IMG/VR virus record: IMGVR_UViG_3300028920_000022 | Coordinates: 310,001-374,000 of that record | DNA: 64,000 nucleotides | Direction: 5' to 3' (one strand) | Shown here: positions 34,292-64,000 of the stretch, in pieces | Layout: the number at the start of each line of letters is the position of its first letter | Position numbering within the stretch: position 1 is the first letter of the stretch | Program-made: the position numbers and the translations under genes | The notes under the pieces: model-generated | Told to the model about the DNA's origin: nothing | The model's database searches: none | What the model saw: the letters and a program-made list of their open reading frames with translations, nothing else

Positions 34292-34651
34292 ATGGATAAT
34301 TTAATTGATAAGATTGTACCATATTTACAAGCCAGGCTGTCAGATTCTGATGGGCAAGTTTTTGATATAGAAGATTTAAAGAAATTTATAAGAATATCTA
34401 TAAGTATTAATGCGCCATATCCTGATAATGATTTAGATAATTACTTTAAAATTCATTTGGAAAGCATAGTTAGTTATGCTGCTGTTAAAGCTTTGGCTGC
34501 ACATGCGTTGAAAGAAAAGGGTTGCGAGTTTAGAGATGTCACTGACACCACATTGCCACCTAAATTGAGTGAGTTTTTGTTACAGGCGTCTCAACAAGAG
34601 TTTGATAGTTGGATGCGTATAAAAGAATTAGAGGAAAGAAATGGGAGTTAA
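34292..34651 (+). CDS. Hypothetical protein
   Basis: 119-aa ORF with GAGG RBS. Confidence 0.55.
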   Translation: MDNLIDKIVPYLQARLSDSDGQVFDIEDLKKFIRISISINAPYPDNDLDNYFKIHLESIVSYAAVKALAAHALKEKGCEFRDVTDTTLPPKLSEFLLQASQQEFDSWMRIKELEERNGS

Positions 34652-44900: not shown

Positions 44901-45081
44901 GATTACATCAGGAGTATTGGTAAGGAAGGAAGATATTGCTAATACTAGTTATGTATTCGAGCTAGAGGATGGAGAAGAAATCACTCTACGAGGTGACGAA
45001 AAGGTAGAATATGATGGTGAAACTCATATTGCTGCTAATTTATACGAGGCGTTAAAAGAAGGTATTTACGGTAACATGTGA
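41938..45081 (+). CDS. nrdJa: Class II (B12-dependent) ribonucleotide reductase, large part, intein-containing
   Basis: GGRIMANAG, SCINC, GGGRRGAQM, TNP[intein]CSEQPL, APTGT, SKTINVP, GLKGVTTYR; NrdJa-type C-terminus EYDGETHIAANLYEALKEG. Confidence 0.9.
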   Translation: MFKQDICYEIWGGESGKYRLRDSDGTAIDQSPEDTCARVARALADVEPADQEKWYKEFVRVLGTRFAGGGRIMANAGAGKYKKETSCINCVVMRQLPDSMLGIMSVATEAALTLKAGCGVGYDFSSIRPKGAHVFGAGAATSGVMSFIEIFNSVCQTVMSGGGRRGAQMGCLDAQHPDIEEFILSKRKDGAFRYFNFSVLITDAFMHAVENGDDWDLWFWNKSNKTKDEVDVKIIEKNDIPYNHPESQYFSFAEDHVECVYSKRTPDVVFEKKVFRTLKANELFELITKSTYNFSDPGFILIDKMNRENNLYFLETIRSTNPCVTGDTLISTNEGLVPAKNLVGKKITVPVDFRMERGVNAETSYWKKTREDAQILKLQTKEGYSIKATPDHRIMTNDGWKELQNLSPGDKVHIYQGNGAFGSKGSFGEGAVFGWLVGDGTITGQKAVLSFWGEEEHILAKSMAKYASKMVANETSAKANRSYDELCAYSVEERNESRVASVRLRRIVEREGLVENKLQVPPSVWAGTEAMQRGFLSGLFSADGTVGNKNSVSVRLSSTSPDLLSQVQVLLQGFGIASKIYLNRNPAGYRSLPDGHGGHKEYLCKAGHELIISKYNLVNFMNRIGFLLPYKQKALLNNIDSLNVLGPRPEHFTATVESVTKDGIEDVYDCSVPGVNAFIANGLVIHNCSEQPLSPLSNCLLGSMMLPVYVRNPFTSDAYFDWEGFAKDVRVASRMLDNVIEINNLPLPELEENLRYQRRHGLGFTGLGSVLNMLGIKYNSSTGVAFGEKISKTMAQQSLLESIHLAREKGPAPFSELIENRARFLNSEYNKRLLETFQETQAIIEQVMEYGVRWSHATSLAPTGTMSLTWGNNCSNGLEPVFMNSYLRNIRMPGKKTKTQMEVFDYAYYEWRQLFGDDPLPNTWVTTDDLTIEDHLNMQAAIQKYVDSATSKTINVPTECSYEDFKNVYIEGWKRGLKGVTTYRFNPKITSGVLVRKEDIANTSYVFELEDGEEITLRGDEKVEYDGETHIAANLYEALKEGIYGNM
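42904..43998 (+). mobile_element. Intein with LAGLIDADG homing endonuclease (365 aa)
   Basis: Begins CVTGDT, block B ATPDHRI, LAGLIDADG motifs FGWLVGDG and LSGLFSADG, ends VYD..VIHN followed by extein Cys. Inserted in the TNP/C.E active-site motif. Confidence 0.95.
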
Positions 45082-51200: not shown

Positions 51201-51237
51201 TAAAGATGATGGCTCTGCTAGGGATTTGGAGACATAA
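48229..51237 (+). CDS. Glycine-rich fibre-like virion protein
   Basis: RITNLADPINPQDAVTMAYVD neck motif; many GG-x-hydrophobic-x-I-x-x-G beta-repeats; 6 DGY. Confidence 0.7.
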   Translation: MTRYPDNVDTGGTGASATLPDVIDNVSPVSAIVVNRLRNAILAIENELGINPSERFGTVRDRLDCLEFGPCGSGGGGSLSTILQDGVTVMNNVEALNIIGANVTDAGDHQADVNFSTFMLLDGSRAATANWDLGGNRITNLADPINPQDAVTMAYVDALFSDGYAPVLETLTVSADGQTVFTLSQVPELPGAVAFFAEGIKQEFGVDYTVSGANIHYTGAEPLLTTDTIDVIYYVLSSGFPGGGIHQTLAQTLFYGNVTGGEDIVVSVTDAITSENPAVPVSVIGDLSITGKLTVGGLIDPTGLVLDTQGSTPGGVPAANKGTIWYRASDEHMVYTTDAGLVIDLTTGIVPTLAEVLDAGNTTDGYDIIMSNGSIITATTGTGATDGSDVDILAGPATGTGAGGAVNINGGSAAAGAGGNVVIYGGDGGTEGDVLVGAAGNTVFSVIGDVLGTITFDKDVAPIINQTAPTSGAGSDFRIDVQDATTTGTGGDFIVNAGSGAGVSQGGAIDLNAGGTGTGSGGIVSITGGDGTINGGTITLESGAAATGGDLELFAGDSAAGTGGNVIVKTQGNTIGDIQFLLDANTVAEFLGSALGTFRFGRATTPVINVEQNTSGAGAAFTITSQKGGSGGVNDGGGLFLNGGNASDLGGDGGAVEISGGTGTNTGIIALHTNIIEIDENTVDIRSVTDGSVNADSGSFAIHSGNITDAGNSGSVIFNSGSSAGGDSGNLDLYTGGASTSGSIQAYTGDGYTDSGDIDIYTGDGYTSSGDIDIVTGDATYGTAGHLHLTAGDSLSGNQSDIYIASGRVLTGTDRNLVNIYGGDGYSNGSTINIIAGAGYWGSGGTLNLYGGSGSTSSVHADDLGPGDGGSVLVSGGGCISGTCGDASLGGGVTAHGTGGNVYINGGFTHDGPSAGSVYISGGVDYGGNDDGYVIFSMADEEVGRFGRDPSALVCSLQVPIKLKEVANPGRPATGYAYLYLSSTDGHLWINKDDGSARDLET

Positions 51238-51239
51238 AT

Positions 51240-51626
51240 ATGGGAACTTATTCAGAACGAGTTATTGGGTATGAGTTTGGACCTGTTGTTATTTCAACTA
51301 TCACTACAGTTACTGTGGGAACGATTGATGGAACCGATTTGAGAGGAATAACACAGAATTATAGCGCAGACGTTGAAATTCATGCGGTCCGATATGGAGG
51401 TGCTACGGGTTATACAGGTACAGCTACCAACACCGCGTCTGCGGAGCGAGGCACTGGTGACGTTCTTTGTCATAATGGTACGGCTGTTCTACTTGGAAAT
51501 GGTATAGCGAATGTATCGTTGGATGATAGTGGAACCGACATTTTAGTCAAATTGTCGACTAATCAGAATGGAGCCATGTCACACTTTGTCTGGCTTGTAT
51601 TTCGGGTAGCGGGTGATGTAGCATGA
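51240..51626 (+). CDS. Hypothetical beta-rich protein (possibly fibre-associated)
   Basis: 128-aa ORF directly after the fibre gene, with GGAG RBS. Confidence 0.5.
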   Translation: MGTYSERVIGYEFGPVVISTITTVTVGTIDGTDLRGITQNYSADVEIHAVRYGGATGYTGTATNTASAERGTGDVLCHNGTAVLLGNGIANVSLDDSGTDILVKLSTNQNGAMSHFVWLVFRVAGDVA

Positions 51627-52408
51627 GAATTACTGTTCTTTGCCCAACACATCGCGGTCCAACTGAGTTGCTTAGTGTGACCCGAATGTTTCGGAATCAG
51701 CGTCACCAGGATCGGCGATTGGTGTTTATTGAGAACGGACCTGCGCTGGGCGTCTCACGGTCGTTAGGAATTGTTGCGGATGCTGTGATGCAGTCCGATC
51801 ATTCCAAAGTTTCGGCGCTCAACGTCGGGTTGGCGTGGCTCCGCACGCATGGAGGCGGGGCTTGGGCTTTATGGGATGATGACGACTACTATGGTCCTGA
51901 ATATTTAACCGGAGTAGCTGTTGTTTTGCCAAAATATAATTTGATTGGTAAACGTTCCTTATATGTACGCCGTAATGATGGGCGGTTGTGGTTGATAGAA
52001 CGTTCTGCCGGATGGCCACTTGGTCATAGCTTTGCTGGTTGGTCGGATTGTTGTGATTTTCGTGAGTGTAATAGGTGGGGAGAAGATGATTTCTTCGTAC
52101 AAGATATGTTAGATCATGGTGCACAAATTGGCGACTCTGGCGCCACTTCATTTGTGTGGCAACGATCAGGTGATTTATCGAAACATATTTGGCCAGCTAC
52201 GGATGACCAAATTGCCCAAATTTTAACACTTAAAAGCGCCAATAGTAAAATTATTGATTATGGAAATGCGAATCGCATATTGGTAGACTGTGTTGAGAAA
52301 CAGTCAGGAAGAGTTGTAGAACTTCCTGATTTCGATCCGCTCAACGTACCTGGAATTCCCATCGAATTCCAAGAAAAAATTAAACAGTTGAGGGTTAATA
52401 ATGGTTAG
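51623..52408 (+). CDS. Glycosyltransferase family 2 embedded in the fibre module
   Basis: RITVLCPT, ALNVG, ALWDDDDYYGPEYL, GEDD. Confidence 0.8.
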   Translation: MRITVLCPTHRGPTELLSVTRMFRNQRHQDRRLVFIENGPALGVSRSLGIVADAVMQSDHSKVSALNVGLAWLRTHGGGAWALWDDDDYYGPEYLTGVAVVLPKYNLIGKRSLYVRRNDGRLWLIERSAGWPLGHSFAGWSDCCDFRECNRWGEDDFFVQDMLDHGAQIGDSGATSFVWQRSGDLSKHIWPATDDQIAQILTLKSANSKIIDYGNANRILVDCVEKQSGRVVELPDFDPLNVPGIPIEFQEKIKQLRVNNG

Positions 52409-55400
52409 AACTAGAGAAGGATTTTTAGGCGGAATAACCATATTGGATGAGGATGGTTACGGATTGGTTACAGCTAGTAATGCCCGTATTACCAACGTTA
52501 CCGACCCTGTTAATCCACAAGATGCTGCCACTAAAAACTATGTAGATGGTTATTTTGAAGCTCATAATGAATGGAGTGAAATTTTAGCTATTGGAAATAT
52601 AACTGATGGAAATAATCCTACAATTAGTACTGGAGACAAGATTGTAGGAGAAACAGATCTTGAATTAGACTGTGCTGCTGATGGATATGTAATAGTTAAT
52701 GCTGGTGGAACTGAAATTGTTCGTTTCGGTTTGGGAAGCTTGGCGATGCAGTTTGGGGATTCTGATAATGCAATTATTGGATTCCCCACTTCGGCTACTG
52801 ATGGTGTTAGCCTTACTATTAGGGGACAGGGTGGGAACGCAAGTTTCGCAGATGGCGGAAATGTGTTTATCATGGGTGGTGATAGCGGTGGCGGTGGCGG
52901 TTCTGCTGGTGGAAATGTTAACATTTCATCTGGCGACGGCTCGGGGGGCTCCCCGGGTGACATTAATATTGAAACCCCAGCCGTGACAAGTTCTTGTGGC
53001 GGAAGTATTAATATAAACACCGCCAACTCTAGCGCTTGTGGTCCTGGTGGAATTTTTGTCACTGTTGGAAATACTTCTGCTGGTTATGGTGACAGCTACT
53101 CATATAGTCCTAATGTTGGCTCGATACCATCTCCAGTATCTTATAAACTTGTTTTAAGAACAGAAGACGGATCTGCTGTAGGCAGTTGCGGAGGTATTTT
53201 ATTTAAAGTTGGTGATGCCAATTATACCCCAGCTCCATTGACTTTAATTGGTGGTGACTCATCTTCTGCTACAGGGACCAAGGGTGGAGATGTTATAGTT
53301 CGTTCGGGTAATAGTGACTTTGGTGAAGGTGGGGACCTTTTTATTATATCGGGATCATCTAGTGGTACCGGAGATGGTGGAGATATTTATATTCGTACCG
53401 GAGATGGTGGAGTAGGTGCCGGGGATGGCTATATTATCTTCGAAGCCACTTCGAGTAATGAAATTGCTCAATTTAATAATTTAAACGGAAATCCTACACT
53501 TCAATTTGGCAATCATGGAGCCGCACTAATTACACAAGATAGCATAGCAACTGCCGCTGAAGCGTTTACCATTAGAGCACAATCTTCCACTGGTTCAACT
53601 GGCGGTGATTTAGAATTATATTCTGGTGATTCTGCTTATGCCCAGTACCCAGGTGATGTTAACATTTACAGCGGTGTTGGTGGAGGACAAGTTTATTCTG
53701 GTAATATTAATCTTTCTACGGATTTGGGGTATACTTCGATCGGTGGTGGCGGCAATATTTCTATTACCACAAATCAAAGCAATGGTTTGAGGGGTGGATC
53801 TATTCTTTTGCAAACCGGTGACGCTTCTAGTGGTGGCCCAGGTACTATCACAATTGCAACCGGAAATGCGAATTCTGGCACTGGGAACCAACATATCAAT
53901 ATAACTGCCGGAAACCAAATCGCTTCATTTAGCGGCGCAGCGGGTAGCGTAAATCTTACTTCCGGAAATGGTACCGGAACATCTGATGCCGGAAGTGTAA
54001 CACTTACAGCAGGAAATTGTGATACTGGGGCGCCAGGAACAATTCTTCTTGTTGCTGGAGATGCCGGCGGCGGAGTAGATGGTGGCGACGTTACTATTCG
54101 AAGTGGATCTGGCGGCAGCGGAGCAGGAGATGGTTATATTATTTTTGAAGCCAGTGTTAGCGGTGAAATTGCTCAATTCAACAATTTAAACGGAAATCCT
54201 ACACTTCAGTTTGATAATCACGGATCTGCAGAAATTAATGGATCTCAAAATTTCTCAATCTATGGGTTAGATAGCGGAACCGTTGATACTTTAATGATGG
54301 GATTGAGCGGTGATAATCTTTTGGTTGGCGATGGCACAAGCGTTGATGATGTGAGGTTGCAATCAGCAACCGCGGTTGAAGCATGGGTTGCAGGATCCAG
54401 AGTGATCGAAATGAGTACCGGCAGTCTTTTCTTTGCATCAGCGGTTGCCGGACCGGTTATTCAACAAGAGCAGACAGGCAACGAAAATTGTGATGATTTG
54501 ACATTACACGCTCAAAATGTCGTAGTAACAGCTGGTGGTCCATTTACTGCAGGAGATATGGTCGTTGCAGCCGGGCAGGTTTCATCAGATAGTGGCGCCG
54601 GCACCAGTAGTGGTGGTGATGTAATCTTACAACACGGAAAATACCAAGACACTGGTTTGCTTCAAGGCGCTAAATTAGGACAAGATGTAAATGGACAATA
54701 TATAAGTGTAGGAGCCGCTTCGGTTTCATCAACCGGCATGGTGCGTGGACCGGAAGACTTCTCGATCTATGGATTAAACACTACTCCGGCTAATGCTAGA
54801 TTAATAGCTTTTGATGATGACGATCTTAGAGTTGGTGATACTAATAATAGCAATTTGTATCTTTCAACTGGTCCCGCTGCGGGAGCCGACGGGTATGTTG
54901 TTTTAGAATCTGATGTTAATGAAATTGTTAGGTTTAGCAGTGATGGAACAGGGGATGCATTTATAGGGTTTGATGTTGGATTTACTAATGGTATTGGTTT
55001 AGCCATAGAGGCTCAAACTACCATGGCTGGAATTGGTGGCGAGCTTTATTTAGCCGCAGGTGATAGTAGCTCTGGATTCGATGGAAATGATGTAACTATA
55101 AAATCTGGCACAGCAGGTGCCGGGCCAGGTAGTGATGGATACATTATTGGAATGATTGGCGGCACAACTGAGTTTACAATAGGACCCAATTACTTTGCGC
55201 ATAGCCCTAATGGATGTAATGTTTCTAGAACAGGTTATTGGCGTAACGGAGAAATATTAGACATTGCTGCACTTGTGAACGGAGGAGCGTTTGATGCCAA
55301 TATTTTGTGGTGGTACAATGATACACTTTTACTTGGAGATGCTACTCGTTCTGACTCTTCTACTTTAGCATCTAATACTGCAGTAAATTTGCGTATTGGT

Positions 55401-56765
55401 AATGATGGTGTTTTTAGGGTTCGTAGTGGCTGGGTAGAAATTCACCCTAATGGAGCCGCCAGCTCTGGGCTTGGAACCATTGCCGGACCTGAAAATTTTG
55501 ACATTTATGGGTTAAATACTGTTCCTGCTGACGCAAGACTAATAGGGCTGGATGGTAACGATCTTCGTGTTGGTGACGCTAATAATAGCAATTTGTATCT
55601 GTCAACCGGACAAGCCGTACCATCTGGGGTTGATGGATATATTATATTCGAACGTGGCTCCGGAAATGAAATATTTAGAGTAGATGAAGATGGTTATAAT
55701 AATATAGATCGTATTTTCTTCTATGGTGATCGTGATTATGATACCATGATTACTAGAGATATTCCAGGAGCTACCACTAGTAACTTATCTAGAGATTTAA
55801 TCATACAAGGACAAACTGGATATTATCCAAATAGATCTGGAAATCTTATCTTGTCCAGCGGTGACTTGACTTCCTACGGTAGTGGAAGTCTGTATGGCGC
55901 CATTGAGTTTCATATTGGAGGATATGAGTCCGATACCACCTTTAAGATGAATGATGATGGTAGAATTGAGTGGGGCGCTGATAGTTTGATGGGGCTTGTG
56001 GCTACTAGTACTACAGGCGCCGGTGCGACTATGGAAATATACGCTCAAGAATCTTCCGCCAATAACGGTGGAGATGTAGATATCCGAGGCGGAGAGGCTT
56101 CTGGTGTGACGGGCGATGGTGGTGATGTTGATATCACTGGAGGAGCATGTCCTAGCAATACCGGCGGAAATGTTAATATATATTCTGGTGATGGTGACGC
56201 AAGCGGTGTGGTCAATATAGGCTATAGCGGATCCTTTGATATCGTTACTTTTGGGGTACAGACACTTGTTGAACCAACGACTGCATACTACATTTCTCGC
56301 TCTAGAGTAGCATCTTCTGATGAATACGCCCTGAAAGCTTTTTCTCCTAATTCGGTATTAACTACACTTGCCCCAAATGGTACCGCTGATGGCTATACCC
56401 AACAGGTTATCTTTGAAGTAGGAACAACAACTACTTGGAATGGCGATCAGGAAACCTGTTTGGCCGTTGCTATACCTACAAATTATTATGGGAAAATAAC
56501 TGTGGATGTTACCGCAGAAGACCAGGCTGATCCCCAGAACGCTTATGGCTATGCTAATTCGTTCTTGATCAGTAATGATGCAGGTGTAGTTACCATCAGA
56601 GATAGTAGCCTGGCTCCTACTGAACAAGATCCTCAGGCTACCGGTGTGTCAGCGACAGTAGATGCAAATGGTGATGATGTTAGGGTTAGAGTAACAGGTA
56701 ATGTTGGAGAAAATTGGACCTGGACAGCTATGATGCATGGAATTGTATGTGAGCGTAGTGTATGA
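52401..56765 (+). CDS. Glycine-rich fibre-like virion protein with internal duplicated modules
   Basis: RITNVTDPVNPQDAATKNYVD neck motif, GGD-x-x-I repeats, duplicated modules; 10 DGY. Confidence 0.7.
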   Translation: MVRTREGFLGGITILDEDGYGLVTASNARITNVTDPVNPQDAATKNYVDGYFEAHNEWSEILAIGNITDGNNPTISTGDKIVGETDLELDCAADGYVIVNAGGTEIVRFGLGSLAMQFGDSDNAIIGFPTSATDGVSLTIRGQGGNASFADGGNVFIMGGDSGGGGGSAGGNVNISSGDGSGGSPGDINIETPAVTSSCGGSININTANSSACGPGGIFVTVGNTSAGYGDSYSYSPNVGSIPSPVSYKLVLRTEDGSAVGSCGGILFKVGDANYTPAPLTLIGGDSSSATGTKGGDVIVRSGNSDFGEGGDLFIISGSSSGTGDGGDIYIRTGDGGVGAGDGYIIFEATSSNEIAQFNNLNGNPTLQFGNHGAALITQDSIATAAEAFTIRAQSSTGSTGGDLELYSGDSAYAQYPGDVNIYSGVGGGQVYSGNINLSTDLGYTSIGGGGNISITTNQSNGLRGGSILLQTGDASSGGPGTITIATGNANSGTGNQHINITAGNQIASFSGAAGSVNLTSGNGTGTSDAGSVTLTAGNCDTGAPGTILLVAGDAGGGVDGGDVTIRSGSGGSGAGDGYIIFEASVSGEIAQFNNLNGNPTLQFDNHGSAEINGSQNFSIYGLDSGTVDTLMMGLSGDNLLVGDGTSVDDVRLQSATAVEAWVAGSRVIEMSTGSLFFASAVAGPVIQQEQTGNENCDDLTLHAQNVVVTAGGPFTAGDMVVAAGQVSSDSGAGTSSGGDVILQHGKYQDTGLLQGAKLGQDVNGQYISVGAASVSSTGMVRGPEDFSIYGLNTTPANARLIAFDDDDLRVGDTNNSNLYLSTGPAAGADGYVVLESDVNEIVRFSSDGTGDAFIGFDVGFTNGIGLAIEAQTTMAGIGGELYLAAGDSSSGFDGNDVTIKSGTAGAGPGSDGYIIGMIGGTTEFTIGPNYFAHSPNGCNVSRTGYWRNGEILDIAALVNGGAFDANILWWYNDTLLLGDATRSDSSTLASNTAVNLRIGNDGVFRVRSGWVEIHPNGAASSGLGTIAGPENFDIYGLNTVPADARLIGLDGNDLRVGDANNSNLYLSTGQAVPSGVDGYIIFERGSGNEIFRVDEDGYNNIDRIFFYGDRDYDTMITRDIPGATTSNLSRDLIIQGQTGYYPNRSGNLILSSGDLTSYGSGSLYGAIEFHIGGYESDTTFKMNDDGRIEWGADSLMGLVATSTTGAGATMEIYAQESSANNGGDVDIRGGEASGVTGDGGDVDITGGACPSNTGGNVNIYSGDGDASGVVNIGYSGSFDIVTFGVQTLVEPTTAYYISRSRVASSDEYALKAFSPNSVLTTLAPNGTADGYTQQVIFEVGTTTTWNGDQETCLAVAIPTNYYGKITVDVTAEDQADPQNAYGYANSFLISNDAGVVTIRDSSLAPTEQDPQATGVSATVDANGDDVRVRVTGNVGENWTWTAMMHGIVCERSV

Positions 56766-57685
56766 AAAAGTTAGTACATAATATTCTGCACCCAACAAAT
56801 ATCCCAAATTGCAAATTATGGTGGGAAGGAGATTTTACCCCTAACGCGGGTAACGTTATAGATGCTGATGGTGATGATTATGTTTATTCTTCTATTCCCA
56901 ATCGCGGAGAACTTGGAGGAGACTTTAGTTCTGCCACTTATAAACCATTAGTTTCTCACCTAGAGAGCGGAGGTTTTCCTAGAAGAGTACCATATTTTAC
57001 AGACGGTTATCAAATAAGCTCTTTGGCTCCAAGTAGCTGGAAGTTTTTGCATAAGGAATTTACTCTTGTGTTTGTAGTTTTTTGTGCCGATACAGGTACA
57101 ATATTTAGTACTTTTAGTGATCCTAGTGATTCAGGAATAGATATAGTTTTGTGGAAAGAAGCGGATGGTGGAGATATAACATTGTATGTTGGTGATGGTT
57201 CTGGTGGCGTGGCTATAAATGATAGCGCCCATGGTTTAACGGATAATATATTACATGTGTGTTCAATTAGATTAGCACAAACCGGTTATGATGTTAGGAT
57301 TGATCAAGAAACAAAATTAGAAGATGTTCCAGCTTGGCCGTTAACTGTGGATGATCCCCCAGATACCTTAAACATTGCATGCCGAAGCGGAGTTACTAAT
57401 CAATTTACGGGTAATCTAATCGCTGCTGTTGCATATGATGGCTATCTGGCTTTAGAGCAATTGGAACAAATAGAATATCACTTTATCTCTAAATATGGAG
57501 ATCAAAGCGTTCATGTGGCTCAAAAACCTACTTTTTATTTTAATATTGATATGACACCCTATGGTTATCATATAGACGTTGAAAATCCGGATTCGGGGTT
57601 GTATGCGAATAGATTGGCGGATTTTTCTGGGAATGCTCATGATGCTTTCCAAAATACCAAAAATAAACAGGGAAAAATAGATTAG
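56762..57685 (+). CDS. LamG-like receptor-binding/fibre protein, short paralog of 58273 and 60834
   Basis: CKLWWEGDF..SIPNRG, WKFLH, KPTFYF, DFSGNAH..QNTKNKQG all align with the N-terminal parts of the two downstream genes. Confidence 0.65.
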   Translation: MKKLVHNILHPTNIPNCKLWWEGDFTPNAGNVIDADGDDYVYSSIPNRGELGGDFSSATYKPLVSHLESGGFPRRVPYFTDGYQISSLAPSSWKFLHKEFTLVFVVFCADTGTIFSTFSDPSDSGIDIVLWKEADGGDITLYVGDGSGGVAINDSAHGLTDNILHVCSIRLAQTGYDVRIDQETKLEDVPAWPLTVDDPPDTLNIACRSGVTNQFTGNLIAAVAYDGYLALEQLEQIEYHFISKYGDQSVHVAQKPTFYFNIDMTPYGYHIDVENPDSGLYANRLADFSGNAHDAFQNTKNKQGKID

Positions 57686-57717
57686 CTAATATTTCGACAT
57701 CACAATAAAGGAGAAAT

Positions 57718-58269
57718 ATGAGCGGTTTTGGTCCATCAAGTGTAGCTACTATTCAAGCCGATATTACCGCAATTGAAACCGATCTTGCGTCAATTGAAGA
57801 TCGTGCTGTCACTATTCCCGCTGGTACTACTTCAGTAGCAGAGCGGTTTATTACGCCATTAACGGCACATGTAGCTTCTCAAGCTTTACCTGTAGCTGGG
57901 GCTTTTACAAATCAAGCTTTGGCAGCCATACCTGATGGAGCGAAGCGAATCATATTTTGGGTTGCATTTACCCGAGGCTCTGCCACAAGTTCGGCTAGAT
58001 TTAGAGTAGAATTTAGCCCTGATGATGCCAACGGGTATAGAACTTCTGTTATCAATGATTCTAGTTTTTATTCTTCTGGGCAGGAAGGTAATGTTGAGTT
58101 TTATACAGAAACTGTTGAAGGTCCGGTGCCTGATGCGGCTGCAGCTACGAGGTATATATTAGCTTTTGATATACCATCTGGATCCAGTTCGTTTAGGCTT
58201 TTAGCGGCAGAAATGGGAGATGTGGGAAACCCGGGAACAATAGCTATAGATTATGTGGCAGAAGGATAA
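57718..58269 (+). CDS. Hypothetical virion protein
   Basis: 183-aa ORF with AAGGAG RBS; short N-terminal coiled coil then beta-rich domain. Confidence 0.55.
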   Translation: MSGFGPSSVATIQADITAIETDLASIEDRAVTIPAGTTSVAERFITPLTAHVASQALPVAGAFTNQALAAIPDGAKRIIFWVAFTRGSATSSARFRVEFSPDDANGYRTSVINDSSFYSSGQEGNVEFYTETVEGPVPDAAAATRYILAFDIPSGSSSFRLLAAEMGDVGNPGTIAIDYVAEG

Positions 58270-58272
58270 AAA

Positions 58273-60837
58273 ATGGTTCTTGGTTCATTTGCTAAAAGAA
58301 CATTATTAAACCCTGGTAGTGTAACTAGAGTTTCTGCTGGTACTAAATTAACTTATGCGTCTAATGTGCCGATTCCGACATTATGGGTTGAGTTTGATTA
58401 TGGGACCTCGATTGACTCTGCTTCTGAGCCGTGGGTGTATTCGTCGGTAACGAACCGGGGCACGTTGGGCGGAACATTTTCGTCTGCCGGAGCTGCGAGG
58501 CTTCAGGTCGCGCACATCGAGAGTGGTAGCTTTGCGCGTCAGGTTGCGCGGGGAGACGGAAGCGCGACGTATGCGGACTGGAGTGCTGCCCTAGCGGACC
58601 AGAAGTTCCTGCACGGCGATAAGGTAATGATCGACCTCACCTTGCGAGTGAACAGCTTTACCGCTGGCGACACGGTGATCGATTCCTGCGCTTGGGGCGG
58701 AGGAAACACCGGGATCCTTGTCTACGTGTCGGCCGTTGGGCAGCTGACAATCGTGCTCAATAATGGCACGGGCACGACGTGCGTTGCCTACACAACCGGT
58801 AGTAACAATATCGTAGCTGGTACGGTTCACACCGTGACCTTGATCCACGATTCGACCCGTTCGCCGCAGACCGAAGTTCTAGTCGACGGAGTGCAGGTCA
58901 ACACCCATGCCATGACGGGTACGCCGTCTACCGGTAATGCGACCTATTCGTTGCGCTTGGGACACCGCAATTCGGGCGGCACCGCGTTTGATGGTCAAAT
59001 CCTTGCGCTCGTTGCTCGTGTTGGCACGTATGTAGCGGCAGAGGGTGCGCTAGTGCGTGGCTACCTCTCCGCGAAGTACCAGCAGCAGAACGCTCAGTCT
59101 CTCCAAGTGCCGACATTCTATTTTAATCTTTCTGTTTATGACGATTATACGATTGACACTGGCAATGCGGAGCCGGGAGACCAAGTAAATCGAATTATAG
59201 ATCTTAGTGGAAATATTCATACTGCGATCCAGAACACCGACGCCAAGCAAGGCACCCTCGGCACCGACAGCGACGGTAACACCGAGATCGCGGTGGACGG
59301 AACGGCGGACTACTACGGGGTTGCGGCTGGTGGCGGTTGGCCGTCGGGAACAAGCCACACGATCTGGGCCGAACTTGACAGCGACAACCCGACTGTCCCA
59401 ACAGAGTTTTTGTTCGATTTCCAAACCGGGCGACTTGCGCTTGGGACGCGGATGGGCGGGACCGGAAAGGCAGGAATATACATATCCGGATATACCGGAG
59501 TCGCTGACAACATCGCTGGTGAACAGTCACTAGAGTGGCACCTCGACGACACCGCTAACACGGTAAGCATGTACCGGACCGGGCAATACTTGGGAGAGGG
59601 CGCGTACATTGGATCAATTGCTATGGGCGGGACCGTCACCCTGGGCATTCACCACAACGGTAGCTCAGCCCCATGGGACGGGGCATTCCAAGAACTCTGG
59701 GCCCGCGATTCCCTCCAGTCCACTACCGAAATCTTCGAGTCCCGCGCCGCACGAGCCGCACGCTACCCGACGCGGTGGGCGGACACGCTGCCGCTGGTTG
59801 TACCGGTGGGCCCCGAAGGTTGCTGGTTCGATACGAGTGACGCGGCGAATTTCGTGCTGGATGGGACCGACATCATCGTCGCCAAGGACTGCAGCCGGCT
59901 GATTGACGATCCGGTCAGCAATGGGGACTTTGAGACGGGCAGTCCGCCGAGCGATTGGACTGCTATTAGCGGTGATACCCTGTCGGCACAGGCAGGCGCG
60001 CGAACCGGCGGCAGTGGTTCACAGATCCTTCGCGGTAGGATCGAGATAGGAGACACGCTTGGATATGCCGTGCAGTCCTGCCTCACGGTTGGACAGCGAT
60101 CCATGTTCGACATTTGGATGCGCGGTGACGGTACCAACGGCTACCCGAGGGTAACGGACAGTGGCGGGGTGAATGTCTGGACCGGGACCACATCCAACAC
60201 GTGGCAGCACGCAATAGCTGTCGTGAACTCGAACCACGCCGATCTAACGCTGCAGACACGTGGTGACAACGCGACCCAGGACTACGCCGAATTTGACGAC
60301 CTGATCGTCACCCCCGGCAACCACGCCTACCAGCCCACCGCCGCGAACCGGCCGACGTATGACGTGGCGAACGGGTGTATGAACTTCGTGGCGGCGAACT
60401 CGGAGTGGGCGGACACGGGGATCGTACCGGGCGTGGCTGGGTCGGTTGACTTGTGGGTCAAGCAGACTGCCGGCACCTACGCATGGGGAGCGTACAACGC
60501 TGGCGCGAACAAACTCTGGCTCCAGAACAGCGGCGGAAATTGGCTCCTCGCGCTGGGGACGGATACGCTGCCGAGCGGGGTTGCAGTGTCCGGTGCGTGG
60601 CAACACGTAACGTGCACGTGGGGTGCCGGAGCATATTCGATCACCGTCGATGGCACGCGAGTGACCGGGACATACACCAGCGGGCTACCAACGATCGCAA
60701 TCTTCCTCGCGTGCCGTAACTTGATCGGCGTAGCAAACACGTTCAGCGATGTCCAAATCAGCGGCTACCAGCATCGCCCCTACGCCATGACTGCCGATCA
60801 AATTGCGTACCTCCACACCCTCGGGCGCAACCCATGA
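58273..60837 (+). CDS. Multi-LamG/CBM-like putative receptor-binding protein (GC mosaic)
   Basis: LamG-like repeats (VDLWVK, WQHVTCTW, ITVDG) and CBM-like SNGDFETG..W; paralog of 60834-63386. Confidence 0.7.
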   Translation: MVLGSFAKRTLLNPGSVTRVSAGTKLTYASNVPIPTLWVEFDYGTSIDSASEPWVYSSVTNRGTLGGTFSSAGAARLQVAHIESGSFARQVARGDGSATYADWSAALADQKFLHGDKVMIDLTLRVNSFTAGDTVIDSCAWGGGNTGILVYVSAVGQLTIVLNNGTGTTCVAYTTGSNNIVAGTVHTVTLIHDSTRSPQTEVLVDGVQVNTHAMTGTPSTGNATYSLRLGHRNSGGTAFDGQILALVARVGTYVAAEGALVRGYLSAKYQQQNAQSLQVPTFYFNLSVYDDYTIDTGNAEPGDQVNRIIDLSGNIHTAIQNTDAKQGTLGTDSDGNTEIAVDGTADYYGVAAGGGWPSGTSHTIWAELDSDNPTVPTEFLFDFQTGRLALGTRMGGTGKAGIYISGYTGVADNIAGEQSLEWHLDDTANTVSMYRTGQYLGEGAYIGSIAMGGTVTLGIHHNGSSAPWDGAFQELWARDSLQSTTEIFESRAARAARYPTRWADTLPLVVPVGPEGCWFDTSDAANFVLDGTDIIVAKDCSRLIDDPVSNGDFETGSPPSDWTAISGDTLSAQAGARTGGSGSQILRGRIEIGDTLGYAVQSCLTVGQRSMFDIWMRGDGTNGYPRVTDSGGVNVWTGTTSNTWQHAIAVVNSNHADLTLQTRGDNATQDYAEFDDLIVTPGNHAYQPTAANRPTYDVANGCMNFVAANSEWADTGIVPGVAGSVDLWVKQTAGTYAWGAYNAGANKLWLQNSGGNWLLALGTDTLPSGVAVSGAWQHVTCTWGAGAYSITVDGTRVTGTYTSGLPTIAIFLACRNLIGVANTFSDVQISGYQHRPYAMTADQIAYLHTLGRNP

Positions 60838-62465
60838 CGCGCATTTTAACCTCAAAGAATTTATTTAGTGTAACCGGTTCCGACAAAATCGGATGGAGCC
60901 CCGCCTCAATCGCAGATTGTCAACTGTGGTGGGAATGTGATTTTTCAGATAAAAGAGGAAGATCTATTACACCCGGACCGCCAGATGTATATGATTCAAT
61001 TCCAAATTTAGGCAGATTTCTGGGTACGTTTGATGCCGCCGCAGCTGCGCGCCCTACCGTTGCCTATATAACCTCAAATGATGTAATTAGACAAGTTGCC
61101 CTCTTTGACGCTACCAATGATAGATTGCAAAGTAGCTTGGCTGCCACTAATTGGAAAAATTTGCACTCAGGTAACTTTACCATATTTGCCGTATATAGAC
61201 CTACGACTGATTCTGCTGGATATATTTTCGCTACCCAGGAAAATAACGCCAATAATACCGGAGTAGCTATATATTTCAATACCGAGGCTAATGGTGGAGG
61301 GTTTACCGTAAGTAATGGAACCGGCGTTTATGTCATTAATCAAAGCTCTGGCGTTGATACAGTAACCGTTGGTGAAGTGTGTATCCAGGAAGTATACGTA
61401 GAACAAGGAGCTATTACCGAATATGAAATTGTTATCAATGGTATAGCTAATGTTGGAGGACCATTAATAGGCGATCCGTCTAGTGGAGATCCCACAAATA
61501 CCGCAGCAATTGGGGCTGGAAGTAATGCTTCTACAGATCCTTTCGGTGGTCAAATAATGGCGATTATTGGATACGATCGATCACTTACAGATTTAGAAAG
61601 AGCGGTGATTAGGGATTATTTAGCAAGTAAGTATCAAGAGAATGGAGTTTCGGTAGAACAGAATCCTACGTTTTATTTCGATTTTAGTACAAAAAGAAGT
61701 TACCATATAGACACAGGAAATGCTCAAGCTGGGGAACAGGCGGATATTTTATATGATTTAAGTGGAAATGCTCATCAGGGTATTCAAAATACAAATAATA
61801 AGCAGGGTACTATGGGTTTTGATGATGATAATAATAGGGAAGTGGAAGTTGATGGGACGGCTGATTGTTATGCATTGAGCGCCGCCGCGGGTTGGCCGGC
61901 TGGAACGAGCCACTCGTTTTGGTGTGAATACGATCCTGACGGCTCCACCGGCGCAAATCAGTATTTCGTGGACTTCGCCACCGGGCGCCTAATCTTTGCG
62001 CACCTTGGCGTGACCGGAAAATTGGGTGTGTACGATGGGTCATGGAGAGGATTGGGATCTGCGATTACCGGTGAGCAGTCAGTGGAATTTCACTGCAACG
62101 ACACAGCCAACACGATCGAGGCTTACCGAACCGGCACCCTAGTTGGACAGGCTACTTACGGCGCATCCGTGGCGATGGGCGGAACCACTGCGCTGTTATC
62201 GCACAATGGGCAAGCGGCTGGGTTTATTGATGGTTCCATCCAAGAACTCTGGGGCCGCGATTCCCTCATGTCGACCACCGAAATCTTCGAGTCCCGCGCC
62301 GCCCGTGCAGCAAAGTATCCTACTCGGTGGGCTGATACTTTACCATTAGTTGTACCAGTGGGACCGGAAGGATGTTGGTTCGATACTAGTTCAGCTGATA
62401 ATTTTGTATTGGATGGCACGGACATCATCGTCGCCAAGGACTGCAGCCGGCAGATTGACGATCCG
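59687..62465 (+). repeat. Dispersed direct repeats between the two LamG paralogs
   Basis: 59687-59750 similar to 62239-62302; 59869-59913 vs 62421-62465 (44/45 identical). Further blocks outside this span: 60342-60365 = 62882-62905 (24 bp) and 60821-60838 = 63370-63387 (18 bp). Confidence 0.9.
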
Positions 62466-63386
62466 CTGGTGGACGGTGACATGGAAGCGGTGGGGACCGC
62501 TAACTGGGCGTCACTGTCCGGCGCCACGATCACGAAACAGGGCGGCGCATATCAGGGCGCACAATGCCTGCGTGCCGCTCTCGCCGTCGCTGACACGTTC
62601 GGGGCCGCCCGTCAGGTGGCGTTGACGGTCGGCGAGCGGTATTTGGTCGAAGGTGTTGCTCAGGGTGACGGCACCAACGGTTTCCCGCGTCTATATTTTG
62701 GCGGTTCTCAGAACCTGTGGAACGGCACAACGGCCAACGCTTGGCAGGAGTGCGTAGCGGTCGAAACGGCTGGGTTCACTCAACTGGACTTGGGCGTCGG
62801 TGGTGTCAATGGCACGGCTGACTATGCTGAGTGGGATGCAGTCACCATCACCCCCGGAAACCACGGCTACCAGGCTACGAGCGCGAACCGGCCGACGTAT
62901 GACGTAGCCAACAAATGCATGACATTCACGGCGGCGAACAGTGAACTTCTAGACTGGGTGGTCCCGAACGCAAGCGCGGGAACATTGTTGGGGTGGGTTA
63001 AGTTCGGGGGTGTGCAACAAACACTGGCTGGATCATGGGATACCAGCGACTATTGCTTGCTCGAATTGGACGGCGCACAAAAGGTTCGGGCATATGTCGG
63101 AACACACGTTATCGTTAGTACAAACACACTGTCTACTGGTGTGTGGCACCTTCTGGCTATAACGTGGGACGGATCATCTGAAACGTTATACATTGACAAC
63201 TTGCCCCCGCAGTCTAAATCAGACGGGGACTCTGCCAGCACCCGTGCCTTGACCGTTGGGGCGCGTGATTTCAACGGTGCGATCGATTGGTATTTGAACG
63301 GATCGATCAGCGACGTACAGCTTCGTCCCTACGCAATCACGGCGGCTGAGTACGCCTACCTCTACGGCATCGGGCGCAACCCATGA
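60834..63386 (+). CDS. Multi-LamG/CBM-like putative receptor-binding protein (GC mosaic)
   Basis: TLLGWVK, WHLLAITWDG, LYID, YLNGSISDV; collinear with 58273-60837, and both end in GRNP. Confidence 0.7.
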   Translation: MTRILTSKNLFSVTGSDKIGWSPASIADCQLWWECDFSDKRGRSITPGPPDVYDSIPNLGRFLGTFDAAAAARPTVAYITSNDVIRQVALFDATNDRLQSSLAATNWKNLHSGNFTIFAVYRPTTDSAGYIFATQENNANNTGVAIYFNTEANGGGFTVSNGTGVYVINQSSGVDTVTVGEVCIQEVYVEQGAITEYEIVINGIANVGGPLIGDPSSGDPTNTAAIGAGSNASTDPFGGQIMAIIGYDRSLTDLERAVIRDYLASKYQENGVSVEQNPTFYFDFSTKRSYHIDTGNAQAGEQADILYDLSGNAHQGIQNTNNKQGTMGFDDDNNREVEVDGTADCYALSAAAGWPAGTSHSFWCEYDPDGSTGANQYFVDFATGRLIFAHLGVTGKLGVYDGSWRGLGSAITGEQSVEFHCNDTANTIEAYRTGTLVGQATYGASVAMGGTTALLSHNGQAAGFIDGSIQELWGRDSLMSTTEIFESRAARAAKYPTRWADTLPLVVPVGPEGCWFDTSSADNFVLDGTDIIVAKDCSRQIDDPLVDGDMEAVGTANWASLSGATITKQGGAYQGAQCLRAALAVADTFGAARQVALTVGERYLVEGVAQGDGTNGFPRLYFGGSQNLWNGTTANAWQECVAVETAGFTQLDLGVGGVNGTADYAEWDAVTITPGNHGYQATSANRPTYDVANKCMTFTAANSELLDWVVPNASAGTLLGWVKFGGVQQTLAGSWDTSDYCLLELDGAQKVRAYVGTHVIVSTNTLSTGVWHLLAITWDGSSETLYIDNLPPQSKSDGDSASTRALTVGARDFNGAIDWYLNGSISDVQLRPYAITAAEYAYLYGIGRNP

Positions 63387-63447
63387 CCCGTCTCGCCGCG
63401 GTCGCCCCGTTCGTTGCGGAGCCGACCAACAAAGGTTATCGCAAAAC

Positions 63448-64000
63448 ATGAAAGAGGAAATGGAGAAACTGCTGATACGAATTATACTTCTTATTACCGC
63501 TTGCACCCCGCCAATACAACAACCAAATCCCGAACAATCGGCAGCAGTCCTGCTACGTCTTAATCACCCATATTGTGGCGCCGTGGCGGTTAGTCCACAC
63601 CACCTCGTAACCACCGAACATTGTATGATGGGAGCTACTATAGTAGAATACCTGGATCAAGATGGTTGGCGATTCTGGAACCCACATTCGGCAACATTAA
63701 TACGTACCGATAAACCACGAGACCTAGCCCTGCTCGAAACCGAATACCCGCTTACTTCATGGAGTAAACCTCGCACCGAAGAATTAGTTGCGGGTGAACC
63801 GGTATGCACCAGTGCTCGATTTACTTGGATCTGCGGCAAGGTAATACATCCACTCACGCTTGCATGTGTGGATCGTGGAAATGGTAAACTATGTTCGAAA
63901 AAATCCATCGAAGCCCAAGAATGGTTGACTGAAACAGATTTGCCCACTTGGGTTGGATTGAGCGGATCGGGTGTGTGGGATGCACAAGGTAGAATTGTGG
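63448..64000 (+). CDS. Trypsin-like (S1) serine protease lipoprotein, 3'-partial; absent from ORF track
   Basis: Manual translation: MKEEMEKLLIRIILLITAC (lipobox), CGAVAVSPHHLVTTEHC (His), RDLALL (Asp), GLSGSGVWDAQGRIV (Ser). Confidence 0.8.
   Translation, partial: MKEEMEKLLIRIILLITACTPPIQQPNPEQSAAVLLRLNHPYCGAVAVSPHHLVTTEHCMMGATIVEYLDQDGWRFWNPHSATLIRTDKPRDLALLETEYPLTSWSKPRTEELVAGEPVCTSARFTWICGKVIHPLTLACVDRGNGKLCSKKSIEAQEWLTETDLPTWVGLSGSGVWDAQGRIV

What the first reader, a model, noticed from the sequence alone, without database searches (positions are those of the whole stretch)
59751..62420. Same 25-aa peptide in two codon dialects, between near-identical DNA blocks
Seen: YPTRWADTLPLVVPVGPEGCWFDTS is identical in both paralogs, but 15 of 25 codons differ synonymously and 13 of those are shifted to A/T in the second copy (about 62315-62390). 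The flanks are near-identical GC-rich DNA (44/45 on the right). A reciprocal AT-rich patch lies in the first gene at about 59115-59225. Inference: patches of about 100 bp are being exchanged between a low-GC and a high-GC gene pool by fine-scale gene conversion at strongly conserved linker peptides.
Basis: partly seen in the sequence, partly recalled or inferred. Interest (0 to 1): 0.7.

Follow-up and report, generated by a model that had tools for sequence, protein, structure and literature searches.

The report
Mosaic phage fibre genes, two codon dialects
Two neighbouring lectin-like (probable tail-fibre) genes of a 459-kb uncultured sediment phage are patchworks of the phage's own AT-rich DNA and foreign GC-rich DNA joined inside conserved linkers between protein domains. 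This is a very clean example of the already known way phages swap receptor-binding modules.

Summary
The window lies in a 458,729-bp, 39.5% GC virus record. Tandem paralogs g1 (58273-60837) and g2 (60834-63386) are 43% identical proteins built LamG-LamG-CBM-LamG. They share an 82-residue conserved block. In its centre (g1 59749-59868, g2 62301-62420) 24 of 35 degenerate same-residue codons differ. In its flanks only 4 of 33 differ (permutation p about 0.0005), and the right flank is 44/45 identical. g2's patch has the phage's own codon usage (GC3 0.23); its flanks have GC3 0.76. A codon-choice HMM splits both genes into resident and GC-rich segments, while about 3,300 neighbouring codons are almost all resident. 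Every switch lies in a conserved inter-domain joint. dS is far from uniform: 0.0 and 0.23 in the flanks, saturated in the patch and domains. One independent contig covers the patch and both junctions at even depth, so it is not a co-assembly artefact. Three distant relatives from other samples switch composition at the same joints. Best reading: recombination between AT-rich resident and GC-rich foreign alleles, crossing over in conserved joints. It is unresolved whether the 100-bp patches are leftovers between two grafts or back-conversions. This is a known kind of process in a new family.

The parts
56762..57685 (+). g0: short third paralog (307 aa). It has the N-terminal part, LamG1 and the first joint only, uses resident AT-rich codons throughout, and ends inside the first joint.
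   Evidence: It is 32-36% identical to the N-terminal 330 residues of g1 and g2. Alignment. The HMM calls it all resident, GC3 0.24.
58273..60837 (+). g1: 854-aa multi-lectin protein (LamG, LamG-like domain 2, CBM-like domain, LamG). It is the most GC3-rich large ORF of the genome.
   Evidence: Pfam Laminin_G_3 E 5.5e-15. GC3 0.66, the highest among ORFs over 400 aa, against a genome median of 0.33.
58273..58503 (+). g1 resident-dialect N-terminal segment (77 codons).
   Evidence: HMM log-odds -56.7, GC3 0.38. GC3 profile.
58504..59118 (+). g1 GC-dialect segment 1 (LamG1 domain, 205 codons).
   Evidence: HMM log-odds +63.5, GC3 0.67.
59119..59223 (+). g1 resident-dialect patch in joint 1 (35 codons).
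   Evidence: HMM log-odds -23.4, GC3 0.23. Simulation p < 2e-4.
59224..60834 (+). g1 GC-dialect segment 2 (domain 2 to the C-terminus, 537 codons).
   Evidence: HMM log-odds +208, GC3 0.73.
59683..59913 (+). Joint 2 in g1: left flank 59683-59748, centre 59749-59868, right flank 59869-59913. All of it is GC-dialect.
60834..63386 (+). g2: 850-aa paralog with the same four-domain build. Its start overlaps the g1 stop (ATGA).
   Evidence: Pfam Laminin_G_3 E 2.4e-14. AlphaFold model with mean pLDDT 85 shows four beta-sandwich domains: 29-268, 280-475 with a helix at 481-499, 559-674 and 716-845.
60834..61877 (+). g2 resident-dialect N-terminal half (348 codons: anchor, LamG1, joint 1 and the first strands of domain 2).
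   Evidence: HMM log-odds -255, GC3 0.28.
61878..62303 (+). g2 GC-dialect segment (most of domain 2), with a weak resident-like dip at 62016-62090.
   Evidence: The switch lies at the conserved GWPAGT-H motif. This is the same place where relative L010 switches, and L010 is 81% identical in DNA over 42 nt there.
62304..62414 (+). g2 resident-dialect patch in joint 2 (37 codons by the HMM; 62301-62420 by the synonymous-difference partition). It encodes the end of the domain-2 helix, the flexible linker and the next strand.
   Evidence: HMM log-odds -34.3, GC3 0.22. Simulation p < 2e-4. Partition. Model pLDDT is below 50 at residues 503-511.
62415..63383 (+). g2 GC-dialect segment (CBM-like domain, joint 3, LamG-C), with an intermediate stretch at 62979-63221.
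60319..60408 (+). Joint 3 in g1 (its g2 partner is 62859-62948). The two share an exact 24-nt run, 60342-60365 = 62882-62905.
   Evidence: 79% protein identity against 32-43% in the adjoining domains. dS 0.67. Exact run. Low-depth relatives in the same sample match only here.
60757..60841 (+). C-terminal joint with the ATGA overlap (its g2 partner is 63306-63390). The two share an exact 18-nt run, 60821-60838 = 63370-63387.
   Evidence: dS 0.59.
63448..63999 (+). Trypsin-like peptidase gene just downstream (it runs off the window). A relative locus has the same gene order.
   Evidence: Pfam Trypsin_2 E 4.7e-07. In L011 a LamG gene is followed by a Trypsin_2 gene.

Best explanation
g1 and g2 are probably receptor-binding fibre proteins of a 459-kb phage. 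Each is a string of lectin-type domains (LamG, LamG-like, CBM-like, LamG) connected by short conserved joints. Each gene is a recombinant between the phage's own AT-rich allele and alleles from a GC-rich pool of the same family.

The crossovers lie inside the conserved joints. There a junction anywhere gives the same peptide and a folded protein. The N-terminal part, which presumably holds the fibre on the virion, stays resident.

The near-identical GC-rich DNA on either side of the g2 patch is young shared sequence: dS is 0 to 0.23. It was either carried in with the GC-rich cassettes or homogenised between the tandem genes.

The 111-120-bp patch between those flanks is resident-dialect DNA encoding the same peptide. 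It is either the part of the joint left between two grafts that ended 110 bp apart, or a short back-conversion from a resident allele.

Shown: the mosaic, its significance, the position of the switches in conserved joints, non-uniform dS, the same behaviour in relatives, and contiguity in an independent assembly.

Inferred: the fibre function, that the GC-rich parts are the incomers, and the recombination mechanism.
For: 1. Sharp switches between two codon dialects occur in g1 and g2. About 3,300 codons of neighbouring genes (48229-58266) are all resident except one 12-codon blip. The model conditions on the amino acid, so this is not an amino-acid effect. Simulations give p < 2e-4 for both patches.
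2. Codon sharing among identical residues depends on the segment. It is 11/35 in the patch, matching the 0.27 background for GC-against-resident comparisons. It is 29/33 in the flanks, against about 0.5 for GC-against-GC elsewhere.
3. dS is 0.00 and 0.23 in the flanks, saturated in the patch, and 0.6-0.7 in the other joints.
4. The GC-rich parts of g1 and g2 differ by dS of about 2 or more yet both keep GC3 near 0.7. They therefore diverged in GC-rich genomes rather than in this 39.5% GC genome.
5. The family lives natively in GC-rich phage contigs. L005 is 62% GC. L006 is 67% GC, with the gene downstream of tape-measure, sheath-initiator and Baseplate_J genes. L011 is 63% GC. In all three the gene's GC3 matches its neighbours.
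6. Three independent relatives switch composition at the same joints. L009 is a contig with GC3 0.19-0.28 whose gene turns GC3 0.8 exactly at the joint-3 motif. L010 switches AT to GC at the GWPAGT-H motif, as g2 does at 61878. L012 has an AT-rich LamG-C core inside a 54% GC contig, which is the opposite direction.
7. In the same sample, low-depth (2.6-5.2x) GC-rich contigs match only joint 3 (60315-60371, 60318-60419) or the C-terminal joint (63354-63390) and run on as unlike sequence on one or both sides.
8. g1 and g2 are 88% and 79% identical in joints 2 and 3 but 29-49% identical in the domains.
9. The patch peptide is the inter-domain linker in the model, with pLDDT below 50 at residues 503-511.
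Against: - No close allele, neither fully AT-rich nor fully GC-rich, was found anywhere. No donor is identified, and the direction (graft or back-conversion) is open.
- Domain trees do not prove different histories. g1 and g2 are sisters in domain 2 (SH-aLRT 98). In LamG1 and LamG-C they are apart in the best tree, but the AU test does not reject holding them together (p 0.31 and 0.13).
- Crossovers between about 70%-identical AT-type and GC-type joints would need relaxed or microhomology-driven recombination. That step is assumed, not shown.
- The fibre role rests on domain type and on the gene context of relatives. The hits to the T7 tail-fibre N-terminal domain in the upstream genes are below Pfam's cut-off, and PHROGs gives nothing.
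- The sequencing run examined may be the one the record was assembled from. Only contigs, not reads, could be examined.
Confidence: 0.72

Rival explanations
1. Fine-scale patch conversion. The GC-rich sequence came in as long tracts. Short tracts of about 100 bp were later converted back from AT-rich resident alleles of co-infecting relatives, so the patches themselves are the exchanged units. This is a sub-variant of the best explanation, differing only in the direction and size of the events.
For: - The near-identity on both sides of the g2 patch (66/75 and 44/45) is most simply read as one homogenised 230-bp block later interrupted in its middle.
- Both patches are of similar size, 105 and 111 bp.
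- It needs the same number of events as the graft version.
Against: - No AT-rich allele of the GC-rich parts was seen at 80% likeness or better in the sample or in any collection.
- The g1 patch is not close in DNA to g2 or g0 in that joint, so no donor lies within the genome.
- The large resident blocks (77 and 348 codons at the N-termini) look like a retained scaffold rather than conversion tracts.
Confidence: 0.2
2. Assembly artefact. The mosaic is a consensus or chimera of co-assembled AT-rich and GC-rich strains joined at shared words.
For: - The source is a metagenome.
- A 31-mer is shared between g1 and g2 (59869-59899 = 62421-62451), and the graph breaks there.
- A minor strain is present at 60144-60419.
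Against: - The g2 patch and both its junctions lie inside one 2,133-nt Logan contig (60318-62450) with zero mismatches.
- g1's joints lie inside a 27-kb contig.
- Depth is flat at 24.6-26.8 across resident and GC-rich parts.
- No alternative contig of 80% likeness or better lies over either patch.
- The same kind of mosaic occurs in unrelated assemblies L009, L010 and L012.
Confidence: 0.04
3. A purely internal process. The genes are old resident duplicates. Their GC-rich stretches arose in place, by GC-biased gene conversion at a recombination hot spot or by selection for GC-ending codons. The joints escaped this.
For: - Tail-fibre genes recombine often.
- The GC-rich parts have GC3 near 0.7, lower than the 0.8 of GC-rich relatives.
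Against: - GC3 steps from about 0.87 to 0.20 within about 15 codons.
- The joints are not uniformly spared. g1's joint 2 is GC-rich and g2's joint 1 is resident.
- The neighbouring large fibre-like genes show no such bias.
- L012 shows the opposite polarity, an AT-rich cassette in a GC-richer gene.
- The two flanks with dS of about 0 are GC-rich in both genes.
Confidence: 0.03
4. The AT-rich patch is kept for a nucleic-acid function: an internal promoter, a terminator, an RNA structure, or a slow-translation pause at a domain boundary.
For: Both patches lie at domain boundaries.
Against: - No promoter-like or terminator-like site falls in 62304-62414, and the one promoter-like match touching the g1 patch (minus strand, 59144-59115, 9 of 12) is a minimum-score match in a scan whose total is at the shuffled expectation (9 found against 8.6 expected).
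- Folding z-scores are -1.36, -0.08 and -0.25.
- AT-ending codons are the common ones in this genome.
- The same joints are GC-rich in the other paralog.
Confidence: 0.02

Closest known systems
T-even phage distal tail-fibre and adhesin genes (gp37/gp38): recombination within conserved motifs swaps specificity segments
   Same: [quoted passage not shown] 1996 and 1998). The idea of a large shared library of interchangeable binding modules is also the same.
   Different: There is no sequence relation: no Pfam or PHROGs hit to those families. The modules here are whole lectin-type domains of 120-240 residues rather than short hypervariable loops. Here the exchange is visible as a change of codon dialect, which implies partners of very different genome composition. 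The exchange was not shown experimentally.
Horizontal transfer of tail-fibre gene parts among unrelated phages (P2 H/G, Mu, P1, lambda stf), noticed through sequence mosaics and deviating base composition. Cited from my own knowledge: Haggard-Ljungquist et al. 1992, Sandmeier 1994.
   Same: The N-terminal virion-attachment part is kept and distal receptor-binding parts are replaced. Composition differs between the parts.
   Different: Those cases have one or two junctions per gene. Here there are at least three to four switches per gene and a 105-120-bp resident remnant inside a joint, in a huge uncultured phage and an undescribed family.
Gene-conversion cassette systems with conserved joints, such as Neisseria pilE/pilS minicassettes and Borrelia vlsE (from my own knowledge)
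   Same: Short conserved DNA stretches flank variable segments and could guide segmental conversion. The tandem copies share exact runs of 18 to 31 nt.
   Different: The genome holds no library of silent cassettes, only g0, g1 and g2. The variable parts are as divergent as distant relatives. No switching was observed.
Diversity-generating retroelements and invertible tail-fibre segments (Mu Gin, P1 Cin)
   Same: Both are phage devices that vary receptor-binding proteins.
   Different: The differences here are synonymous third-position changes, not adenine-specific ones. The repeats are direct, and no meaningful inverted repeats exist. This is not such a system.

Membership tests
Pfam Laminin_G_3 (PF13385), concanavalin A-like lectin/glucanase superfamily | A match to the family profile above the curated cut-off (27.6 bits) | tested here: met
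   g1 scores 56.3 bits (E 5.5e-15) and g2 scores 54.2 bits (E 2.4e-14), with two stretches each at the N- and C-terminal domains.
Pfam Laminin_G_3 (PF13385), concanavalin A-like lectin/glucanase superfamily | Beta-sandwich (jelly-roll) fold | tested here: met
   The AlphaFold model (pLDDT 85) has four all-beta domains. The best Foldseek matches are multi-LNS/LG proteins, neurexin-1 alpha and laminin LG (E 4e-13 to 1e-9). TM-scores for the whole chain are low because the relative domain arrangement differs.
Phage tail fibre / receptor-binding protein | Encoded in the tail or baseplate module, or shown to be part of the virion | tested here: inconclusive
   Relative P0009 lies four genes downstream of Baseplate_J, after tape-measure and sheath-initiator genes. 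In the window, the upstream 1002-aa and 1454-aa proteins hit the T7 tail-fibre N-terminal domain only below the cut-off (E 9e-4 and 9e-3). There are no PHROGs hits and no virion data.
Adhesin genes shuffled at conserved motifs (T-even gp37/gp38 type) | Conserved motifs alternating with divergent segments | tested here: met
   The joints are 58%, 88% and 79% identical, against 29-49% in the domains.
Adhesin genes shuffled at conserved motifs (T-even gp37/gp38 type) | Recombination junctions located in or next to the conserved motifs | tested here: met
   The codon-dialect switches inside the genes (59119, 59224, 61878, 62304, 62415) fall in joints 1, 1b and 2; the 58504 switch lies near the start of the LamG1 domain and was not mapped to a named joint. 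Relatives switch at joint 3 (L009, L012) and at joint 1b (L010).
Adhesin genes shuffled at conserved motifs (T-even gp37/gp38 type) | Sequence homology to gp37/gp38 | tested here: not met
   There are no Pfam or PHROGs matches to these families and no tblastn match in 50,697 phage records. The locus works like that system but is not a member.
Diversity-generating retroelement target | Template and variable repeats that differ at adenines of the template | tested here: not met
   Differences in the repeated block are synonymous third-position changes, mostly G or C in g1 against T or A in g2. A reverse transcriptase gene was not searched for.
Invertible tail-fibre segment (Gin/Cin/Hin) or shufflon | Inverted crossover repeats flanking alternative C-terminal segments | tested here: not met
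   Only two weak inverted pairs were found (22 nt at 77% and an 18-nt palindrome), and neither is at a joint. The shared blocks are direct repeats.

The most novel reading that the evidence does not exclude
The joints may be dedicated recombination adaptors, kept nearly identical at the DNA level across a community of phages whose genomes range from under 40% to over 60% GC. Lectin-domain cassettes would then move freely, and in both directions, between otherwise unrelated phage lineages (including a 459-kb phage) by short-tract conversion of about 100 bp. The two codon dialects inside one linker would record traffic that is still going on in this sediment community.
Probability: 0.15. Interest if true: 0.6.

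Novelty: new member of a known kind. Interest (0 to 1): 0.4.

Why it matters
Host-range proteins of huge uncultured phages are almost unstudied. Here base composition labels each segment, so the crossover points can be read to within a few codons without any close relative. They fall in conserved inter-domain joints, as in the classical T-even adhesins.

The result also implies gene flow between phages (or prophages) of very different GC content in one sediment community. That bears on how far the shared pool of receptor-binding modules reaches, and on the hosts of huge phages. The conserved joints suggest candidate boundaries for comparing the lectin modules of this family.

It does not reveal a new mechanism.

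Tried and rejected
Searches for close alleles. All found only the window's own genes or relatives at or below about 40% identity, apart from one 142-residue fragment 59% identical to the g2 N-terminus.
- Megablast and tblastn against 50,697 phage records.
- Pattern scans of IMG/VR, of JGI metagenomes (which returned only the source contig Ga0272441_10000008) and of GTDB genomes.
- Three word-index protein searches, including cut-outs of the joints meant to catch fragments.
- An exhaustive HMMER search of 1.84 billion representatives. It returned 1,167 relatives, the best at 37-43% identity apart from a 142-residue fragment 59% identical to the g2 N-terminus.
- The closest relative, P0003, has no retrievable DNA.

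Failed calls.
- One alignment was too divergent for pattern search.

Domain trees.
- They were meant to prove different histories per domain and gave no decisive result. AU p was 0.31 for LamG1 and 0.13 for LamG-C, and domain 2 is monophyletic.

A silent cassette library in the genome.
- None exists. There are only three family copies, and no extra copies of any joint.

Functional elements in the patches.
- The promoter, terminator and RNA-structure scans gave no signal above chance. The only site touching a patch is a minimum-score minus-strand promoter-like match at 59144-59115.

Repeat-based variation systems.
- There are no inverted repeats for an invertible segment.
- The substitution pattern does not fit a DGR.

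Read phasing.
- This was not possible. The only run is served as Logan contigs, not reads.

Full report
**Setting**

The window is bases 310001-374000 of a single 458,729-bp virus record from IMG/VR. Its contig name is Ga0272441_10000008. The record is 39.5% GC. The only public run that holds the region is a marine sediment metagenome.

Genes in the window are almost all on the + strand. They include a tubulin/TubZ-like protein, helicases, a DnaB-like helicase and a ribonucleotide reductase. So this is a huge phage.

The finding concerns two tandem genes:
- g1 is 58273-60837 (854 aa) and g2 is 60834-63386 (850 aa). They overlap in ATGA and are 43% identical as proteins.
- A third, short paralog, g0 (56762-57685, 307 aa), covers only the first domain and the first joint.

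- The 25-residue peptide is identical in both genes (g1 59764-59838, g2 62316-62390).
- 15 of 25 codons differ, all synonymously, and 13 of them are more A/T in g2.
- To the right, 44 of 45 bases are identical (59869-59913 against 62421-62465).
- To the left, 66 of 75 bases are identical (59686-59760).

A two-breakpoint maximal chi-square test on degenerate same-residue codons places the patch at g1 59749-59868 and g2 62301-62420.
- 24 of 35 codons differ in the patch, against 4 of 33 in the flanks (permutation p about 0.0005).
- g2's GC3 is 0.23 in the patch and 0.76 in the flanks. g1 has 0.69 and 0.79.

Nei-Gojobori estimates show that dS is not uniform:

| Segment | dS between g1 and g2 |
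|---|---|
| Left flank of joint 2 | 0.23 |
| Right flank of joint 2 | 0.00 |
| Patch | saturated (pS 0.90, dN 0.074) |
| Domains | 1.9 to saturated |
| Joint 3 | 0.67 |
| C-terminal end | 0.59 |

**The pattern is gene-wide**

I built a two-state HMM on synonymous codon choice, conditioned on the amino acid.
- The resident model came from 116,827 codons of this genome.
- The GC model came from two GC-rich relatives' contigs.

It gave this segmentation:

| Gene | Coordinates | Dialect |
|---|---|---|
| g1 | 58273-58503 | resident |
| g1 | 58504-59118 | GC |
| g1 | 59119-59223 | resident |
| g1 | 59224-60834 | GC |
| g2 | 60834-61877 | resident |
| g2 | 61878-62303 | GC |
| g2 | 62304-62414 | resident |
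| g2 | 62415-63383 | GC |

Two weak intermediate stretches occur in g2. About 3,300 codons of the neighbouring genes (48229-58266) are resident throughout, apart from a 12-codon blip.

I also redrew synonymous codons from the genes' own GC-rich usage 5,000 times. None of the redraws produced a window as resident-like as either patch.

g1 is the most GC3-rich large ORF of the genome, at 0.66 against a median of 0.33.

It sits in a different joint, and it is not similar in DNA to the corresponding part of g2 or g0. So it is not reciprocal in the sense of a swapped segment.

**It is not an assembly artefact, as far as contigs can tell**

Logan's contigs of the run reproduce the region without a mismatch at flat depth (24.6-26.8).
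- One 2,133-nt contig (60318-62450) contains the g2 patch and both junctions.
- A 27-kb contig contains g1 up to 59898.
- The graph breaks only at the 31-mer shared by the two genes (59869-59899 = 62421-62451) and at a low-depth variant.

Read-level phasing therefore remains to be done.

**What the proteins are**

- Both match Pfam Laminin_G_3 at the N- and C-terminal domains.
- Relatives of the third domain carry CBM_4_9.
- An AlphaFold model of g2 (pLDDT 85) shows four beta-sandwich domains. Helices end domains 1, 2 and 4.
- Residues 503-511 of the model have low confidence. They lie inside the 25-residue peptide, which is therefore an inter-domain linker.
- Fold matches are generic multi-LamG proteins such as neurexin and laminin.
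- A relative, P0009, lies just downstream of tape-measure, sheath-initiator and Baseplate_J genes on a 67% GC myovirus-like contig.

I therefore read g1 and g2 as tail-fibre or receptor-binding proteins. This is an inference from domain type and context.

**Joints and domains**

Identity between g1 and g2, segment by segment:

| Segment | Protein identity |
|---|---|
| LamG1 | 29% |
| Joint 1 | 58% |
| Domain 2 | 49% |
| Joint 2 | 88% |
| CBM-like domain | 43% |
| Joint 3 | 79% |
| LamG-C | 32% |

- No other protein among 1.84 billion cluster representatives shares joint 2 at more than about 38% over its length. One matches its right half at 64%.
- The joints also share exact DNA runs: 31, 24 and 18 nt.
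- Domain trees were not decisive. g1 and g2 are sisters in domain 2 (support 98). They are apart in LamG1 and LamG-C, but AU tests do not reject monophyly.

**Evidence from elsewhere**

- The family occurs natively on GC-rich phage contigs: 62%, 67% and 63% GC, with the gene's third-position composition matching its neighbours; a further relative, L008, lies on a 59% GC contig.
- Three independent relatives are compositional mosaics with switches at the same joints:
  - In L009 all other genes have GC3 0.19-0.28. The family member turns to GC3 of about 0.8 exactly at the joint-3 motif.
  - L010 turns GC-rich at the GWPAGT-H motif. That is the position of g2's switch at 61878, and it is 81% identical to g2 in DNA over 42 nt there.
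  - L012, on a 54% GC contig, has an AT-rich LamG-C core bounded by joint 3 and the C-terminal motif. This is the opposite polarity.
- In the same sediment sample, low-depth GC-rich contigs match the stretch only at joint 3 and at the C-terminal joint, and run on as unlike sequence.
- A minor strain at about 2.6-2.9x is about 94% identical to g1 over 60144-60419.
  - All ten of its listed differences over 60144-60334 are transitions, and by my reading of the frame seven are at third codon positions.
  - It diverges just after joint 3. The next residues read VVPNATG in g1's frame, resembling g2's VVPNASAG rather than g1.

**Interpretation**

- The GC-rich parts of g1 and g2 differ from each other by dS of about 2 or more, yet both keep GC3 near 0.7. 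They therefore diverged in GC-rich genomes and are recent residents of this AT-rich genome.
- The resident parts are the N-terminal segments and short pieces inside the joints.
- The simplest account is recombination between resident AT-rich alleles and GC-rich alleles of the same family, with crossovers in the conserved joints. There any junction yields the same peptide.
- The near-identical GC-rich flanks of joint 2 are young shared DNA.
- The patch between them is resident DNA for the same peptide.

Two versions need equal numbers of events and cannot be separated with present data:
- domain-sized grafts that each ended within the joint, leaving a remnant;

I rejected these alternatives:
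- In-place GC enrichment. The steps are sharp, the joints are treated inconsistently, and the opposite polarity occurs in L012.
- A functional DNA or RNA element in the patch.
- DGR or invertible-segment mechanisms.
- A silent cassette library.

**Comparison with the known**

The behaviour matches the classical picture of T-even adhesin genes. [quoted passage not shown] It also matches the older observations of horizontally exchanged distal tail-fibre parts in P2, Mu, P1 and lambda (my own knowledge).

There is no sequence homology to those families. The locus works like them but is not a member.

What is particular here:
- the size of the modules (whole lectin domains);
- the number of switches per gene;
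- the base-composition tag that exposes junctions to within a few codons;
- the implied exchange between gene pools of about 39% and over 60% GC, in a 459-kb phage.

**Verdict**

- The process is a known kind in a new, uncharacterised family.
- Interest is moderate at 0.4. It would be higher only if ongoing, bidirectional, short-tract exchange across GC-divergent phages could be shown.

Noticed in passing
window 60144-60433: A minor strain or relative at about 2.6-2.9x (main strain about 25x) is about 94% identical to g1. All ten listed differences over 60144-60334 are transitions, seven at third codon positions. It diverges completely just after joint 3, and the next residues resemble g2's start of LamG-C. 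This could be a natural joint-3 recombinant.
   Followed up: partly
genome bases 49,500-70,500 (outside the window; L013 = G000:C1:49001-68900): This is a second GC-rich island, up to 57-60% GC in a 39.5% GC genome. It is made of many small + strand ORFs, among them a RadC-like JAB protein (E 2e-33) and a PGDYG protein (E 9e-14), plus one tRNA. It looks like imported accessory genes of mobile-element type.
   Followed up: partly
window 56762-57685: The short paralog g0 ends exactly inside joint 1. Relative locus L010 has the same arrangement: a 336-aa LamG gene followed, with an ATGA overlap, by a longer paralog. Short and long forms may therefore be a conserved pair.
   Followed up: partly
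window 63370-63390: The ATGA stop/start overlap motif at the g1/g2 boundary is repeated after g2 (an 18-nt exact run, 60821-60838 = 63370-63387), although no third full gene follows. It may be the scar of a longer tandem array or of the donor's gene order.
   Followed up: no
window 63448-63999 and L011 1658-2266: A Trypsin_2-type peptidase gene directly follows the LamG fibre gene both here and in a 63% GC relative contig. It may be a conserved partner, for example for maturation or assembly.
   Followed up: no
window 34641-36011: A tubulin/TubZ-like protein (Pfam Tubulin E 1e-14, TubZ-like_C E 7e-11, PHROG 'tubulin PhuZ'), as in nucleus-forming jumbo phages.
   Followed up: no
window 41938-45081: The ribonucleotide reductase large subunit is 1047 aa. 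An internal stretch (about residues 319-590) matches unrelated PHROGs rather than RNR, which suggests an inserted element such as an intein.
   Followed up: no
window 51812-51847: A 12-codon stretch with GC3 1.0 lies inside an otherwise resident-dialect ORF (51623-52408). It may be chance or a tiny foreign patch.
   Followed up: no
window 48229-51237 and 52401-56765: Two very large proteins (1002 and 1454 aa) lie upstream of the LamG genes. Their only hits are sub-threshold matches to the T7 tail-fibre N-terminal domain, at residues 129-161 and 21-52. They are possibly further fibre proteins, and they use the resident codon dialect throughout.
   Followed up: partly
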